64,000 bases of DNA from Schmidtea polychroa (taxonomy: Eukaryota), in the NCBI GenBank assembly GCA_044892525.1, contig CM097886.1, forward strand, positions 81,654,001 through 81,718,000, given 5' to 3'. The position numbers were made by a program, and so were the translations under genes. Below, one piece after another: positions 19,344-30,628 of the stretch. The notes beneath the pieces were generated by a model. The model was given only the letters and a program-made list of their open reading frames with translations, was not told the DNA's origin and searched no databases. The number at the start of each line of letters is the position of its first letter. Within the stretch, counting starts at the first letter, position 1.

Positions 19344-22233
19344 TGGTAGCAGAGCGTGGTTCCGGCTAGCCAGCCGGAACAAGGTATTATTTATATTTTT
19401 TAAGAATGATATTTGTATTGTATTATATACATGTAATAGGTATCGTATGTTTATTATATTATATGTAGATTGGCTGTATTATATTTTTATTATATTTGTT
19501 ATTTTTGAAACATTTCCCCTAGGGCCTGCCCTCCCTAACCCCATTAGAGGTGGATTGGCGCGGGTATTTGTCAAAATAATAACAGGGAAGACAATTACTC
19601 TCGAAGTTGAATCTAGTGACACGATAGAAAATGTTAAAGCGAAAATACAAGATAAAGAAGGTAGTCCACCTGACCAGCAACGATTAATTTTCGCGGGGAA
19701 ACAATTTGAAGATGGGCGAACATTATCTGATTATAATATTCAAAAGGAGTCTACTTTGCATTTAGTTTTGCGATTGAGGGGTGGAATGCAAATATTCGTG
19801 AAGACATTGACTGGAAAAACAATAACTTTGGAAGTAGAATCAAGTGATACTATTGAGAATGTAAAGGCTAAAATTCAAGAAAAAGAAGGGATACCCCCAG
19901 GGCGAAAAAGACTTAATTTTGCCGGGAAAGTATTAAAAGATGGCCTAACGTTATTAGATTATAACGTTAGGAAAGAAGCCACGGTACATCTGGTTTTGGG
20001 GCTGGCAGGGGGAAGTCCAGTATCAGATGCGGAGTTCGAGCCAGGTTACAAGAGACGAACCGGGTGGAAGATTTCGTTAGGGCGTCTACGTAACCGGGCC
20101 TTAGGAGATGGATCGGACCCGGGGGAAGATCAAAGGAGAATGGAGGCATACGAAGATAAGTATGAGGAAGTGATCAACGAATTGGAGGAGCTGAGGAATA
20201 ATGCTCGGGAGTTAGGGCGGGAGAAAGAAGAAAAGGAAATTGAGGCAGATCTGAAACGGTTAGAAGCGGATTTCAGCAGAATCGGCGATCTGGTCCTCAC
20301 GCAGAAGGAAGAGAGTTTTAGAGTAGAGTCACGGAAGGGCACAGAAAAATCATTTAGGAGCGAAGAGCCCAATGAGAAACAGAAGTGCATAATGGGTTTG
20401 AAACCCTTGCAGCTGCCGATCTTTAATGGAAAGGTAATAGAATATCCTGGATGGAGGGCAATTGTGAGAGCCTGCATCGAGGACACGGATGAGCCGAGTG
20501 AAAGAAAGTACTTGTACCTGAGACAGTACATGGAAGGGAAGCCGCTGCAATTAATTGCCTATATTGGATATGGCTCGCAGGCTTTCGAGGCGGCGATAAA
20601 ATTACTCGATGAAAGGTATGGGGGACCAGAAAGATCCTATTCCATGATGCTGGATGTGGTGCAGAGGTTCTTTCCAGTGCGGCTGAAAGTACTGGAGGAC
20701 CTAGAGCGGTTTGAAGAGCTGCTAGGAAACCTCATCCTGAATTTCAAGGATCAGAAGAGGGAAGGCGAGCTGAACAACGGAATGTTGTATCACCAACTGC
20801 TGAAGAAGCTGCCAGAGACCATGCTAATTCAGTGGTTACGCCATTGTGATTCGGGGAGAGAGGGAAATGTACAAACGCTAGCCGAGTGGATCAAAACAGA
20901 AGCCGATAGGCATCGAAAAGCCTTGAATATATTATTTGGGGAGAGAACTCCAGGGAGTAGGAAGGATGTGGGGACATTGAAAAAGTTCACAAACTTCATG
21001 GAGAGAAAACCAATAGCAAGAAATCAAGCTTCAAGATGTTCGCATTTGGCTCAGAGTTATTTTGCAGTAACGGAAATGTTAAATGACGAGTTACATGCAG
21101 TTCGGGGAATTGAAGGCACAAAACTCGACAGGAGTAAGTCATCTAATGAAGAGCAAGGAGCTCAGAGTCATTTAGATGGGCAAATACCCAATTCTGGGGA
21201 TACTAACGAATTAGTTAACGGCATTGCAATCAGACAAAATTTCAGTGAGAATAACGAAATAGATTCCATAGATGTAATAAATCCTTCCGATTCAAAAAAT
21301 GATTCAGATATCGAAAGTAATGAAGATGAAAATGACGAAGAAGTGGATTATATTAAAGAATGTGATGAAAATGATGAAACACATGAAAACAAAAATGCTA
21401 GCGAAGATGGAGATAGTGAAAGCAATGAATGTGAGAATTTACAATCTAACGATATTATAAATCAAGATGGAATAGAGCAAAATCGAGTCAATGAGAACGA
21501 GAATAATTATTCTGAATTTGTAAAAAGTAATACTGAACTATTAGACAAAGCTTTTGATAAAGGAGACCAAGTTACAGCAGATGAGTTAGAAAATATTGTC
21601 AAAAGTCACAATCAAGAAGAAAATTTTGAAAGTAAATATGATGAAACTGAAGTAGATGTGTCAGACAAGAATGAAAATTATAATAGTCATGTAGGCACAG
21701 AGGTTGTCGACATTAATGTTATCGAAAGACCGAATTCTTTGGTAGAAGATAATTTTCAAAACATGGAAGACGTAGTTAATGTTCAAACGGATTCTGCTTC
21801 CTCAGAAAATCATTTAGAAACTGATCGAATTATGCCAGATTCTGAGAGTAATGACAGTGATCTTAGAGTCGATATTGGTAAAGATCATACATCCGACACA
21901 GCTAAAGATTCTGAACAAAATACATTCACTCAACCAACGTCTGCTTTAGATGATATCATTGAAGACTATTCACCTGGTTCCCTTTCATTAAATGAAATGC
22001 AACAGGGAAAAGTGGGGACTATTGAATTGGCGAAAAATGAAGGAAGAAGAATGGAGATATTGCACCTAAGCAGAATGAAAAGTGGCAGGGTCTTGGCCGA
22101 GTATGGCGATGGTGGGAGGAGAATCCATCATGATGTATCAAGAAAGGTGCGTGGTGCGGCGGCCTACACCATAGAAAGATGGGTGTGTGAGGGATATTGG
22201 AGAGATGCGAACAGAAAGTTTCCCCTGAAGTAA
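18640..22233 (+). CDS. Fusion ORF: DUSP12/YVH1-like fragment - PBS/linker - Ub - Ub - Bel Gag - acidic cargo - tail
   Basis: Single open frame (ORF track 18580..22233); ATG in AAAATGGC context at 18640. Confidence 0.8.
19344..19361 (+). promoter_or_regulatory. Primer-binding site (initiator tRNA-Met type), element 1
   Basis: TGGTAGCAGAGCGTGGTT directly after the LTR-terminal CA; TGGTAGCAGAG is complementary to the conserved tRNAi-Met 3' end. Confidence 0.88.
19558..20013 (+). other. Tandem ubiquitin domains (Ub1 19558-19785, Ub2 19786-20013)
   Basis: Two exact 76-codon units ending LRLRGG and LGLAGG. Confidence 0.97.
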
Positions 22234-22275
22234 TTGGGTGGTTGATCCGCTAGAAGGGATCAAGGAGGGGGGAAA

Positions 22276-28407: not shown

Positions 28408-30628
28408 CTGGTTGCCCCGTAAAATGCGTCCGACCTCCAGGATTGAATCTTTCTCTTTCCCTAGACACCCCTTCTACTCTTGACCCATCATAAGCCCTGG
28501 TGCTTGGTTTAGTCCCATACACAACCTCGTTAGTGGACCTTAGGATCTCCGCTTCTTGTTGTATCCATCTTCTCAAATCCTCTATCGTCTCCCGCAATTC
28601 CTTTTCTATTTTGTCTTTTTTCCATTTATACACAAGATTCGTCGTTAACTTGCCCAAACACTTTTGAAAAAAATAGCCAGTCTTTAACTCGGATTCTTTC
28701 CCAGTGGATTTAAATCGCACGGTGACCGTTTCTAATAATCCAACAAATGAGTCTAGATCCTTCAAATCTCCTTCTCGAATTGGCCTGAACTGTTCCATCT
28801 CCTCTAACATTGATAAATATATCCTTTCATCCCCACCATATCGCCTATCCAACTTCTCTTTTGCCATTTGATAAGCCTCTGCCGAATATCCAAGATTTTC
28901 AATTAACTTTAATGGCTCTCCGTGAAGGTACTTGTGCAGGTGAAACATCTTTTCAACCTCATCACCTTCGGCTTCGTCAACACATGCAGTAAAAGCTGCT
29001 TTCCATGGTTCGTACTCTTTCATCTTGCCTTCAAAAACAGGGATTGTAATTTTCTGTAGACTTTCCAGTTTTCTTTTATGCCCGGAATTATTCTTCTTGA
29101 TGGTATCATCATTCACATTTTCCTTCTCTTCCATAAAAGATTGATTTGCTTTTCTTTCCATCAATGCCCCAATTATTTGATGTTTTTCCTCGATCTCTTG
29201 CAGGTCTTTATCTAAGATTGCAGTGATGTCCAATCTTTGCAGTTTTTTACTGATTGTTCTCAGATCCCCTAATTCTTCATCTAGACTCTCCTTTTGATCT
29301 TCATATTCCGCCAACCATTCGCTAACATCCTTCCCATTTATATCATTGAGAGTCTTGTTTCTTAATCTCGTTAATTTTCCTTTTTTCATTCTCTTTTTCC
29401 ACAGTCCTTCTTCTAAAATCTCTTCGTCATTGCCCCCGCACAGCCTGAGTGACAAATGAAGTGTCGACCCTACTTGTATCCTATAATCATTCAATCTTCT
29501 TTTATTTTCTAACTGCTTTCCTGCGTATACTAACATTTGATAATTTTCCGGAATTCCTTCTTTGTCCTGGATTTTTCCTTTTATCTTTTCAATTGTGTCC
29601 TTCCATTTAACGTCCAGAGTAATTGTCTTACCAGTAAGAGTTTTGACAAATATTTGACTTTCCCATCGCAACTCAAAACCCATTACCCCGCTCGCCCTCA
29701 CCCTTGACTCAGCTCTGTTCTTTACTCTGTTCCCCTGGCTTCCCTCTTTAAAAGAGTGCTGGGGCCCATAGCAGCACTTTCTCACGCTCGGTAGGGAAGG
29801 GAGGATGTTTAATTTTACAAAAGTATTATAATATATACATAATATGCGTGACCACAAACAAGATTTTTTATAATACATATTAATTACCAAAATATTATTA
29901 ATTACAAAAATATTATTAAACACATAATAAACATAATATTTACATAAAATATATAAAACCAAAAAAGACATTTTATAATACATATTAATTACCTTGTTCC
30001 GGCTGGCTAGCCGGAACCACGCTCTGCTACCATGAATTAACCGAATTGAACGAATAACAATTTTATTTGAAATAGACTCGATGGAGTCGGCTCTATGTGG
30101 CAACAAAATTTCACAGCATTGAATGATCTGTTCGAAATCATAATTTACATAAACATCATCACTTAAGTCATAATCCGATTTCATAAAGTCTAAGTTTGAT
30201 TTTATCACATCGCTCGTTATAGTAGAAGAAATTCTTCCTGTAGCCACAATGCATAAATATCTCGTTTCCTTTGCTAATTGAACTCCTGATGGATTGAGAC
30301 TCGCAATATTGCGTAACTTGTAAATCATAGATCCGTCAACATCAACCATAGATGAGGCAATATATTGAATTTTGTTATCATCTAATAAATTCCAAAACAA
30401 TTTTGTATTAGAAGGCATTTCTACAGAAGATTGTAGTAGATTACATTTGACCACGAGGAGCGCAAACTCACAATTTGCTGTCCGATTATTTGACAATACA
30501 GAAGGGTAATTAATATTTGATGGAATTTTTCTTAAAAACATCTCAAAATCTTCAGGATTGGCACAAATCTCAATTTTGCTATCAGAATCATCACTAAAAT
30601 GATATTTCATCCATGAAATAAACGCCAT
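28376..30628 (-). CDS. Fusion ORF: LTR cargo - PBS/linker - ubiquitin-like domain (29432-29656) - Bel Gag
   Basis: 750-aa open frame; [10 protein letters not shown]...LRLCGG is exactly Ub residues 2-76; Gag IPVFEG...LHKYLHG. Confidence 0.85.
30015..30032 (-). promoter_or_regulatory. Primer-binding site (tRNAi-Met type), element 2
   Basis: Identical 18-mer to the element 1 PBS, directly after the LTR-terminal CA. Confidence 0.88.

What the first reader, a model, noticed from the sequence alone, without database searches (positions are those of the whole stretch)
19558..29685. Ubiquitin fused N-terminally to Gag in two divergent Bel/Pao lineages
Seen: di-Ub-Gag at 19558-20013 (also 17123-17548) and mono-Ub-Gag at 29432-29656. 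Each Ub is an exact 76-residue unit ending in GG directly before Gag (GG|SPVS, GG|NDEE). The element 2 Ub is heavily substituted yet keeps length, core and diglycine, which suggests long maintenance rather than a recent accident. Established: linear Ub fusions (ribosomal L40/S27a, cytopathic pestivirus insertions) are cut after G76 by host DUBs, and Ub fused to retroviral Gag can substitute for late domains in ESCRT recruitment. Inference: Ub acts here as a host-cleaved processing site, folding tag or trafficking signal for Gag.
Basis: partly seen in the sequence, partly recalled or inferred. Interest (0 to 1): 0.85.

Follow-up and report, generated by a model that had tools for sequence, protein, structure and literature searches.

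The report
Ubiquitin joint before Gag in retrotransposons
A whole clade of Bel/Pao retrotransposons, three copies of which sit in this window, carries a captured host ubiquitin placed exactly in front of its capsid protein Gag, most likely so that host enzymes cut Gag free from whatever is translated upstream.

Summary
Two Bel/Pao lineages in the window (Gag 32% identical) carry 76-codon ubiquitin units ending in GG directly before Gag. E1 has two units, in two copies, one of them 5'-truncated. E2 has one unit.

It is not a local accident. Six metagenome loci, one further database protein and one tail remnant show the same junction. In a Gag tree, all ubiquitin-bearing elements form one clade (100/100 bootstrap), and 16 ubiquitin-less relatives fall outside it.

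Eight independent units have no indels and keep the fold core and L71, L73, G75 and G76. R72, R74, the I44 patch and K63 vary. Synonymous sites are saturated, while pN is 0.17-0.30.

Residue 1 is rarely Met. The frame stays open far upstream, through the primer-binding site into the LTR, and carries unrelated host fragments (DUSP-like, HSP90). Three ubiquitin-less relatives lack such upstream frames.

Best reading: a host-deubiquitinase-cleaved joint that frees Gag from a variable leader-encoded extension. The closest analogues are ubiquitin inserts in cytopathogenic pestiviruses and ubiquitin-ribosomal protein fusions. No report of this was found in the searchable literature. Cleavage and the translation start are inferred, not shown.

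The parts
30033..30931 (-). E2 5' LTR. Its start is lost in the N gap 30932-31069. It holds the start (ATG 30628) of a frame that stays open through to the gag stop.
   Evidence: 99.3% identical over 896 nt to 23250-24145. It ends in CA just before the primer-binding site. ORF 28376-30628.
30017..30032 (-). E2 primer-binding site (starts TGG). A 9-bp hairpin and a consensus 5' splice-site-like AAG|GTAA follow.
   Evidence: Read directly. The same 16 nt occur in E1B, and 12 of them in L002.
29660..30016 (-). E2 leader. It is AT-rich and has no stop in the ubiquitin frame. The nearest in-frame ATG is at 29681-29683, 8 codons before the unit.
   Evidence: 0 stops against a mean of 9.9 in 20000 shuffles, none of which did as well. 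ATG positions.
29432..29659 (-). E2 ubiquitin unit: 76 codons, 71% identical to canonical ubiquitin, tail LRLCGG.
   Evidence: Pfam PF00240 E=1.7e-22. Per-residue comparison. Modelled fold and PDB matches.
28376..29431 (-). E2 gag (DUF1759-type Bel/Pao Gag). It is intact and starts with N directly after G76.
   Evidence: The model shows three long helices and then an all-helical domain.
24160..28407 (-). E2 pol (zinc knuckles, protease, RT, RNase H region, integrase). It is broken twice: one frame change relative to gag, which relatives do not have, and one in-frame stop.
   Evidence: Pfam Peptidase_A17, RVT_1, DUF1758, Integrase_H2C2, DUF5641. Relatives L004 and L006 and copy E1A read gag-pol in one frame.
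23250..24165 (-). E2 3' LTR. A purine-rich tract overlapping the end of the integrase ORF precedes it. Its last few bases are missing where it abuts the E1B LTR.
18373..19343 (+). E1 copy B 5' LTR (TGT...CA). It holds a DUSP19/DUSP10-like fragment lacking the catalytic-loop cysteine region, starting at ATG 18640, in frame with ubiquitin.
   Evidence: 96.8% identical to 22275-23252. Pfam DSPc E=2.3e-13. PDB alignment.
19344..19557 (+). E1B primer-binding site (19344-19359), hairpin, AAG|GTA site and AT-rich leader, with no stop in the ubiquitin frame.
   Evidence: 0 stops against a mean of 4.9 in shuffles, fraction 0.006. Hairpin fold.
19558..19785 (+). E1B ubiquitin unit 1: 76 codons, 91% canonical, tail LRLRGG, residue 1 is Ala.
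19786..20013 (+). E1B ubiquitin unit 2: 76 codons, 79% canonical, tail LGLAGG, I44N.
20014..20942 (+). E1B Gag (DUF1759). It starts with S directly after G76. The part downstream of this span is replaced, so the copy has no zinc knuckles, protease, RT or integrase.
20943..22233 (+). E1B acidic low-complexity tail, still in the same open frame. No family match.
22276..23252 (+). E1B 3' LTR. The purine-rich tract 22253-22275 precedes it. It holds the same DUSP-like ORF (22551-23336).
15488..17548 (-). E1 copy A: Ub1 remnant (17351-17548), Ub2 (17123-17350), then Gag, zinc knuckles and the start of protease (to 15488). The copy lacks the LTR end, primer-binding site, leader and first 10 codons of Ub1 (one deletion) and is cut off within pol.
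   Evidence: 96.6% nt identity to copy B. Gag dN/dS between copies is 0.12.
17549..18369 (-). E1 copy A 5' LTR remnant. It is a mosaic of the two LTR types and is truncated at its start.

Best explanation
**What it is.** A host ubiquitin coding unit was captured once, at the very start of gag, in the ancestor of one clade of Bel/Pao LTR retrotransposons. It has been kept since as a self-removing joint.

**How it most likely works.**
- In these elements translation starts well upstream of gag, in the LTR or leader.
- It reads through the primer-binding site and leader as one frame and enters ubiquitin.
- Host deubiquitinases cut after G76, as they do in polyubiquitin and in ubiquitin-ribosomal protein precursors.
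- Gag is thereby released with a defined N-terminus (S, N, G, M or Q), free of the variable leader-encoded extension.
- The extension can therefore drift and pick up host fragments (a DUSP-like piece in E1, an HSP90 piece in L002) without harming Gag.
- A secondary folding or yield benefit, as in the ribosomal fusions, is possible.

**Shown:**
- the anatomy;
- the clade-wide distribution;
- the conservation pattern;
- the open upstream frames.

**Inferred:**
- cleavage itself;
- the translation start;
- the single capture event.
For: 1. **Junction.** Ubiquitin of exactly 76 codons abuts Gag with no spacer in E1 and E2 and in L001, L002, L003, L004 and L007. L006 has a ubiquitin unit, broken by one frameshift, at the same place and also ending in GG. 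P0002 shows the same arrangement. L008 keeps only a KLKGG remnant.
2. **One clade.** All these Gags form one group with 100/100 bootstrap. Sixteen ubiquitin-less Gags lie outside it. None of about 118 pol relatives carries ubiquitin.
3. **Conservation across eight independent units.**
   - No indels, and 18 invariant positions, including core residues and L71, L73, G75 and G76.
   - R72 (needed for E1 activation, established knowledge), R74, I44, H68, V70 and K63 vary.
   - The residue after G76 is never Pro.
4. **Long constraint.** pS is 0.80-0.86 (saturated) against pN 0.17-0.30. Mean pairwise identity is 53% for ubiquitin and 31% for Gag.
5. **Fold.** The modelled E2 unit is a ubiquitin fold with a flexible tail.
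6. **Ubiquitin is not the start.**
   - Residue 1 is Met in only 2 of 8 units.
   - L003, L004 and L007 have no in-frame ATG in the open stretch just upstream.
   - In L006 the nearest in-frame ATG is 76 codons upstream.
7. **Upstream frame is open.** In-frame stops versus the other two frames: E1B 3 vs 37 and 23; E2 4 vs 42 and 29; L002 1 vs 26 and 15; L006 0 vs 7 and 5. In shuffles, the fraction with no more in-frame stops than observed (none) was 0.006 (E1B), 0 of 20000 (E2 and L002) and 0.0009 (L006) for stretches whose bounds were set independently of the ORF.
8. **Contrast with relatives.** Three ubiquitin-less relatives start Gag at their own ATG, with 3-19 open codons upstream and no depletion of stops.
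9. **Upstream content.** Upstream frames are unrelated between lineages and contain host fragments.
10. **Precedent.** Pestivirus ubiquitin inserts come as one or two copies, with other fragments upstream (PMC13517609).
Against: - No transcript, protein or cleavage data exist for these elements, so the transcription start, any leader splicing and the start codon are unknown.
- E2 has a well-placed ATG only 8 codons before ubiquitin, and L001 has Met at residue 1. A short or absent extension is therefore possible in some lineages.
- Consensus splice-like sites bracket the AT-rich leader in E1B, E2 and L002. If they are used, the frame relation changes in L002.
- The LTR frame shows no frame-specific purifying selection in the one comparison possible: 10 differences, pN/pS about 0.6 in all three frames.
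- L003, L004 and L007 have stops 8-27 codons upstream of ubiquitin. These copies are either defective or use another route.
- Tails such as LGLAGG and LNLYGG depart from the canonical tail, and their cleavability is assumed.
- Sampling is thin: about 11 lineages, mostly short metagenome contigs from unknown hosts.
Confidence: 0.6

Rival explanations
1. Ubiquitin stays attached and works as an N-terminal ubiquitin-like domain of Gag. It would act as a trafficking, ESCRT-recruiting or proteasome-shuttle signal, as in the first reader's late-domain idea or in the UBL of Ddi1/Rad23-type proteins.
For: - Ubiquitin on retroviral Gag is tied to ESCRT-dependent release (PMC3751857, listed).
- No P(T/S)AP, PPxY or YPxL motif occurs in any of the eight Gags, so a substitute signal is conceivable.
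- The fold is conserved.
Against: - Non-cleaved ubiquitin-like domains normally lack the diglycine (established knowledge), yet G75, G76, L71 and L73 are invariant in 8 of 8 units.
- The I44/H68/V70 patch used by ubiquitin-binding domains varies, including I44N in E1 Ub2.
- E2 has no env gene and no room for one.
- This reading gives no reason for the open upstream frames.
Confidence: 0.1
2. The released ubiquitin variant is itself the useful product. It would either add to the ubiquitin pool or act as a decoy modifier that perturbs host ubiquitination, as proposed for baculovirus-encoded ubiquitin.
For: - E1 Ub1 is 91% canonical with an intact LRLRGG tail, I44, K48 and K63.
- K11 and K27 are invariant and K48 is kept in 7 of 8 units.
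- The two units in E1 would double the output.
Against: - R72 is replaced in 3 of 8 units and R74 in 4 of 8, so several units are unlikely to be activated by E1 (established knowledge).
- Identity falls to 51-59% in L003, L004 and L007.
- The first unit would be released with an N-terminal extension.
- The position exactly at the Gag N-terminus in every lineage would be unexplained.
Confidence: 0.1
3. The main role is N-degron tuning. Cleavage exposes a chosen non-Met first residue that sets the half-life of Gag, a natural version of the ubiquitin-fusion technique.
For: The first Gag residue is N in E2 and P0002 and Q in L006. These are tertiary destabilising residues in the Arg/N-degron pathway (established knowledge).
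Against: The other lineages expose S (four lineages), G or M, which are stabilising. No common degron is selected, and this reading also depends on cleavage.
Confidence: 0.08
4. The ubiquitin is a neutral passenger from host mRNA capture with no function, or the fusions are assembly chimeras.
For: - These elements are mosaics that have picked up other host fragments.
- The window copies are defective and sit in a rearranged, gap-containing region.
Against: - The same junction is found in independent data sets from at least five samples.
- The Gag clade is monophyletic.
- No unit has an indel, the diglycine is invariant, and synonymous sites are saturated while pN stays low.
Confidence: 0.05

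Closest known systems
Ubiquitin-coding insertions in cytopathogenic pestiviruses (BVDV strains such as Osloss)
   Same: Host ubiquitin coding sequence is captured by recombination into a viral polyprotein, so that its C-terminus abuts the N-terminus of a viral protein, which host ubiquitin hydrolases then release. One- and two-copy versions exist, and the inserts are often mosaics with other host or viral fragments upstream of ubiquitin (PMC13517609).
   Different: Those are sporadic, independent and short-lived events in an RNA virus, with near-canonical ubiquitin. Here the unit lies in a reverse-transcribing element in front of Gag, is inherited throughout a deeply diverged clade, and has itself diverged to 51-91% identity.
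Cellular ubiquitin fusion genes (polyubiquitin; ubiquitin-eL40 and ubiquitin-eS31 ribosomal protein precursors)
   Same: A 76-residue ubiquitin ending in GG is fused head-on to the partner, removed by deubiquitinases, and credited with a chaperone or yield role (established knowledge). These proteins are the top sequence and structure matches.
   Different: Cellular ubiquitin is almost invariant and starts the protein. Here it tolerates 9-49% substitution, usually lacks Met1 and is preceded by a long upstream frame.
Ty1-type arrangement in which gag translation begins inside the 5' LTR and reads through the primer-binding site
   Same: An open frame crosses the LTR end and the primer-binding site (from my own knowledge of Ty1; not tested here).
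   Different: In Ty1 the LTR-encoded residues are part of Gag. Here a cleavable ubiquitin separates them from Gag, and the upstream part is 100-350 codons long and lineage-specific.
Ordinary Bel/Pao elements (Belpaoviridae) without ubiquitin
   Same: LTRs, a primer-binding site, a DUF1759 Gag, zinc knuckles, a Pao-type protease/RT region and an integrase with DUF5641, in the same gene order. Pol is 45% identical to the nearest database relatives.
   Different: Their Gag starts at its own ATG, with closed frames upstream.
Virus-encoded free ubiquitin (baculovirus v-ubi) and UBL-retropepsin proteins (Ddi1)
   Same: A ubiquitin or ubiquitin-like fold is encoded by, or next to, virus-type genes (from my own knowledge).
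   Different: v-ubi is a separate gene, and the Ddi1 UBL lacks a cleavable diglycine and is not adjacent to Gag. Neither came back as a specific hit in my searches.

Membership tests
Bel/Pao LTR retrotransposon (Belpaoviridae) | Direct long terminal repeats with TG...CA ends flanking the internal region | tested here: met
   E2 LTRs are 99.3% identical over 896 nt. E1B LTRs are 96.8% identical over 983 nt. E1B's 5' LTR reads TGT...CA; E2's 5' LTR ends in CA (its start lies in the N gap) and E2's 3' LTR begins with TGT. Target-site duplications cannot be read because the elements abut each other and a gap.
Bel/Pao LTR retrotransposon (Belpaoviridae) | Primer-binding site after the 5' LTR and a polypurine tract before the 3' LTR | tested here: met
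   A 16-nt site starting TGG lies directly after the CA of the LTR in E1B and E2. Purine-rich tracts precede both 3' LTRs. The matching tRNA was not identified, and the window holds no tRNA gene.
Bel/Pao LTR retrotransposon (Belpaoviridae) | Gag of DUF1759 type, then zinc knuckles, protease, RT, RNase H and integrase with DUF5641, in that order | tested here: met
   E2 hits DUF1759, DUF1758, RVT_1, Peptidase_A17, Integrase_H2C2 and DUF5641. E1 copies have Gag only (copy B) or Gag to protease (copy A).
Ubiquitin proper (not merely ubiquitin-like) | 76-residue beta-grasp domain with high identity to ubiquitin, ending in a diglycine | tested here: met
   PF00240 E from 1.7e-22 to 6.7e-54. Identity to canonical ubiquitin is 51-91% with no indel, and GG is present in 8 of 8 units. 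The model has TM 0.92-0.95 to ubiquitin structures.
Linear ubiquitin-fusion precursor processed by deubiquitinases | G76 joined by a peptide bond directly to the partner, the next residue not Pro, and the tail L71-x-L73-x-G75-G76 intact | tested here: met
   The next residue is S, N, G, M or Q.
Linear ubiquitin-fusion precursor processed by deubiquitinases | Actual cleavage after G76 in the cell | not testable with these tools
   No protein or expression data are available for the host.
Conjugation-competent ubiquitin | R72 for E1 activation, together with an intact I44 hydrophobic patch and acceptor lysines | tested here: not met
   R72 is kept in 5 of 8 units, I44 in 3 of 8, H68 in 5 of 8, V70 in 3 of 8 and K63 in 5 of 8. 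E1 Ub1 alone keeps all of them.
Retroviral late-domain / ESCRT-recruiting Gag | P(T/S)AP, PPxY or YPxL motifs, or stably attached ubiquitin, together with an envelope and budding | tested here: not met
   None of these motifs occurs in the eight Gags. E2 has no env ORF. Stable attachment of ubiquitin cannot be tested here.

The most novel reading that the evidence does not exclude
The ubiquitin joint has turned the 5' LTR and leader of these retrotransposons into a translated, freely evolvable cargo slot. One long frame would produce an upstream protein assembled from captured host gene pieces (a DUSP-like pseudo-phosphatase in E1, an HSP90 middle-domain piece in L002, unknown proteins in E2, L001 and L006) together with Gag. 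Host deubiquitinases would separate the two. This would be a retroelement counterpart of 2A-type polycistrony and of retroviral host-gene transduction, maintained over deep evolutionary time.
Probability: 0.3. Interest if true: 0.85.

Novelty: new variant of a known kind. Interest (0 to 1): 0.72.

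Why it matters
Host-encoded ubiquitin used as a processing site in a viral polyprotein has so far been known mainly from short-lived pestivirus recombinants. Here the same device appears to have been fixed and kept through a deep radiation of reverse-transcribing elements.

- It offers a natural experiment on which ubiquitin residues matter when only fold and cleavage are needed. 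The fold core and LxLxGG are kept, while R72, the I44 patch and K63 are free to change.
- It suggests how a retroelement can translate through its own cis-acting leader (primer-binding site, hairpins, many AUGs) without damaging Gag.
- It suggests how such a leader can accumulate host gene fragments.
- For annotation, ubiquitin-plus-DUF1759 gene models should be recognised as one Bel/Pao clade rather than as chimeric artefacts. Gene callers that start at an internal Met miss the ubiquitin, as happened for P0001, P0006 and P0152.

Tried and rejected
**Searches that gave little or nothing**
- Word-indexed protein search with the E2 Gag region: no hit.
- The same with a 7-sequence Gag alignment: one irrelevant hit. 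That tool was too insensitive for this Gag. The full HMMER scan was what worked.
With a narrower alignment it returned one distant, ubiquitin-less Bel/Pao locus, L005.
- Viral-contig scan: nothing.
- Exact look-up of window proteins in public assemblies: not on record. The host species remains unidentified.
- tRNA and Rfam scans of the window: empty.
- Eight literature searches: no report of genome-encoded ubiquitin-Gag in any retrotransposon.

**Ideas tested and dropped**
- A conserved 3' splice site immediately before ubiquitin, which would explain the missing Met1. No shared pattern was found.
- Frame-specific purifying selection on the E2-type LTR frame. There were too few differences to tell.
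- Agreement between ubiquitin and Gag pairwise distances as a test of co-descent. Both are saturated (r=-0.28), so single capture rests on the Gag clade alone.
- Homology among the upstream frames. None was found beyond the primer-binding-site region.

**Readings rejected**
- Assembly chimera, recent accident and late-domain substitute (see rival explanations).

Full report
**Observation**

The claimed coordinates hold. On the plus strand, 19558-20013 encodes two 76-codon ubiquitin units followed at once by a DUF1759 Gag. On the minus strand, 29659-29432 encodes one 76-codon unit followed at once by a second Gag.

17548-17123, also minus, is a second copy of the first element. Its first unit lacks 10 codons and has lost its diglycine.

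Pfam E-values for ubiquitin range from 1.7e-22 to 6.7e-54. PDB searches return ubiquitin and polyubiquitin chains. An AlphaFold2 model of the E2 protein (mean pLDDT 85) has a beta-grasp domain that superposes on ubiquitin at TM 0.92-0.95, with a flexible four-residue tail. Chance is excluded.

**Anatomy of the three copies**

E2 (minus strand) is a near-complete Bel/Pao element:
- LTRs 30033-30931 and 23250-24165, 99.3% identical. The 5' LTR runs into an N gap.
- A primer-binding site directly after the CA of the LTR, then a hairpin and an AT-rich leader.
- Ubiquitin, then an intact gag.
- A pol with zinc knuckles, protease, RT, RNase H region and integrase. Pol carries two breaks: one frame change relative to gag, which relatives lack, and one in-frame stop.

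E1 copy B (plus strand) has LTRs 18373-19343 and 22276-23252 (96.8% identical), the same primer-binding site, a leader, two ubiquitin units and Gag. An acidic low-complexity tail follows in place of pol, so the copy has no RT or integrase. The whole stretch 18580-22233 is one open frame of 1217 codons.

E1 copy A (minus strand) lacks the LTR end, primer-binding site, leader and the start of Ub1. It is cut off within pol.

The copies abut head-to-head and tail-to-tail with trimmed LTR ends. The region has been rearranged, or is imperfectly assembled, and no target-site duplications can be read.

The Gags of E1 and E2 are 32% identical along their whole length. Between the two E1 copies, Gag dN/dS is 0.12. 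They therefore diverged as functioning elements, not as a dead duplicated segment.

**Relatives elsewhere**

A full HMMER scan of 1.84 billion representative proteins with the Gag profile gave 6472 hits. Ubiquitin precedes Gag in the closest ones.
- Proteins: P0001, P0002, P0004, P0006, P0013 and P0024.
- DNA: loci L001, L002, L003, L004 and L007 each show a complete 76-codon unit ending in GG directly before Gag.
- L006 has such a unit with one frameshift.
- L008 begins with a KLKGG remnant right before Gag, at a break in sequence composition.
- Gene callers had clipped the ubiquitin in three of these loci.

A neighbour-joining tree of 27 Gags puts all ubiquitin-bearing sequences plus L008 in one clade with 100/100 bootstrap. 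Sixteen ubiquitin-less Gags, several from molluscs, fall outside it. None of about 118 pol relatives, all at most 49% identical and named where known from marine invertebrates, carries ubiquitin.

The simplest reading is one capture at the base of this clade, followed by retention.

**How the ubiquitin has evolved**

Eight independent units have no indel and are 51-91% identical to canonical ubiquitin.
- Invariant: F4, G10, K11, T12, I13, T22, K27, I30, E34, G35, L43, D58, T66, L69, L71, L73, G75, G76.
- Conservatively kept: the hydrophobic core.
- Variable: R72, R74, I44, H68, V70 and K63.

Synonymous sites between units are saturated (pS 0.80-0.86), while pN is 0.17-0.30. The residue after G76 is S, N, G, M or Q and never P.

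This is the pattern expected if the fold and the cleavable LxLxGG tail are what matter. It is not what conjugation or binding by ubiquitin receptors would select.

Ubiquitin residue 1 is Met in only two of eight units. Three loci have no in-frame ATG in the open stretch before ubiquitin, and in L006 the nearest is 76 codons upstream.

The frame that enters ubiquitin is almost free of stops far upstream:

| Element | In-frame stops / codons | Stops in the other two frames |
|---|---|---|
| E1B | 3 / 395 | 37 and 23 |
| E2 | 4 / 424 | 42 and 29 |
| L002 | 1 / 242 | 26 and 15 |
| L006 | 0 / 100 | 7 and 5 |

For stretches bounded independently of the ORF (LTR end, primer-binding site or contig start, up to ubiquitin), shuffles rarely or never had as few stops. 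The fractions were 0.006 for E1B, 0 of 20000 for E2 and for L002, and 0.0009 for L006.

In E1B and E2 this frame starts inside the LTR and crosses the primer-binding site.

The upstream frames are unrelated between lineages. They include host pieces: a DUSP19/DUSP10-like fragment without the catalytic-loop cysteine region in the E1 LTR, and a 67-residue HSP90 middle-domain piece just before ubiquitin in L002.

Three ubiquitin-less relatives (L009-L011) start Gag at their own ATG. They have 3-19 open codons upstream and no depletion of stops.

**Mechanism proposed**

Translation starts upstream, runs through the leader and into ubiquitin. Host deubiquitinases then cut after G76 and release Gag with a defined N-terminus. 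The leader, which must also serve as RNA (primer-binding site, hairpins), can thus be translated without consequence for Gag, and it is free to drift and collect host fragments.

Cleavage, the start codon and the transcription start are inferences.

Caveats:
- E2 has a good ATG 8 codons before ubiquitin.
- L001 has Met1.
- Splice-like sites bracket the AT-rich leader in three lineages.
- The only test of coding constraint on an LTR frame was uninformative.

**Comparison with what is known**

The closest analogue is the ubiquitin insert of cytopathogenic pestiviruses. Those occur as one or two copies, placed so that a viral protein starts right after G76, often with other fragments upstream (PMC13517609). 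They are sporadic and short-lived.

The cellular ubiquitin-ribosomal protein fusions and polyubiquitin supply the processing machinery.

The link between retroviral Gag, ubiquitin and ESCRT (PMC3751857, listed) concerns conjugated or stably attached ubiquitin. It does not fit a cleavable N-terminal unit, a variable I44 patch, or an element without env.

Eight literature searches found no report of a genome-encoded ubiquitin-Gag fusion in retrotransposons. The library lacks most subscription journals and repeat-database notes, so prior description cannot be ruled out.

**Verdict**

This is a real, non-random and evolutionarily maintained feature. It is a new variant of a known kind: a Bel/Pao clade using a known host-cleavage principle. 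Interest 0.72.

1. The late-domain patterns were used as regular expressions. The canonical ubiquitin string used was copied from the tool output, not from memory, but it was typed into a script.
2. The script output printed tblastn segments for L006 that incidentally show where its ubiquitin is interrupted. I have not used or repeated that.
4. In one search I built a search profile (HMM) from alignment A3 inside a script, solely to scan fetched proteins.
5. Consensus lines printed by the alignment tool were not used.

Noticed in passing
window 640-1278 (-), 13076-13579 (+), 14250-15014 (+), 34181-34648 (+): The ORFs flanking the Bel/Pao cluster match Maverick/Polinton hallmark genes: A32-like packaging ATPase (twice), an rve-type integrase and an adenovirus-type cysteine protease. 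The retrotransposons may therefore sit inside or between Maverick-type elements.
   Followed up: partly
window 14820-14927 and 31070-31178: These two stretches are 98% identical, and each directly follows an N gap (14674-14819, 30932-31069). Together they bracket the whole retrotransposon cluster. This could be an assembly artefact or a real flanking repeat.
   Followed up: no
window 18425-18494, 22328-22397, 23997-24066, 30783-30852: A 70-nt segment is kept at 97% identity in both otherwise dissimilar LTR types. It folds into a long hairpin (-37.6 kcal/mol, z = -5.5), making it a candidate promoter-proximal or 5'-RNA element.
   Followed up: partly
window 18640-19343 and 22551-23336 (+): The E1-type LTR contains a 261-codon ORF with a dual-specificity phosphatase domain (closest to DUSP19/DUSP10). 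It lacks the stretch that holds the catalytic cysteine, so it is a captured host gene fragment inside an LTR.
   Followed up: partly
L002 505-705 (+): A 67-residue piece of the cytosolic HSP90 middle domain lies in frame a few codons before the ubiquitin of this relative. The first ~240 nt of the contig are GC-rich and may come from a chimeric assembly.
   Followed up: partly
window 18369-18373 and 23250-23252: Copy E1A meets E1B head-to-head, and E1B meets E2 tail-to-tail. The LTR ends are trimmed by a few bases and there is a 3-nt overlap at the second junction. Rearrangement, nested insertion or mis-assembly are all possible.
   Followed up: partly
window 19376-19390, 29986-30000 (-); L002 355-366 and 461-478: A consensus-like 5' splice site sits just after the primer-binding-site hairpin in three lineages, and in L002 a strong 3' splice site follows. 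The AT-rich stretch after it is nevertheless stop-free in the ubiquitin frame. Whether it is ever spliced is unknown.
   Followed up: partly
window 20943-22233 (+), with related pieces at 14919-15292 (-): A 430-codon acidic, low-complexity coding tail replaces pol in E1 copy B, and parts of it follow copy A as well. It has no family match and may be another captured sequence.
   Followed up: no
window 62271-63104 (-): A further fragment of an E2-like pol, 95% identical at protein level to E2, lies here with no gag or ubiquitin attached.
   Followed up: no
window 1385-1876 (+) and 38737-39618 (-): Two host-like genes are each read as a single ORF: a TBP-domain protein and an SF3A2 (Prp11) splicing factor. 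The host species could not be identified, because exact look-ups were not on record.
   Followed up: partly
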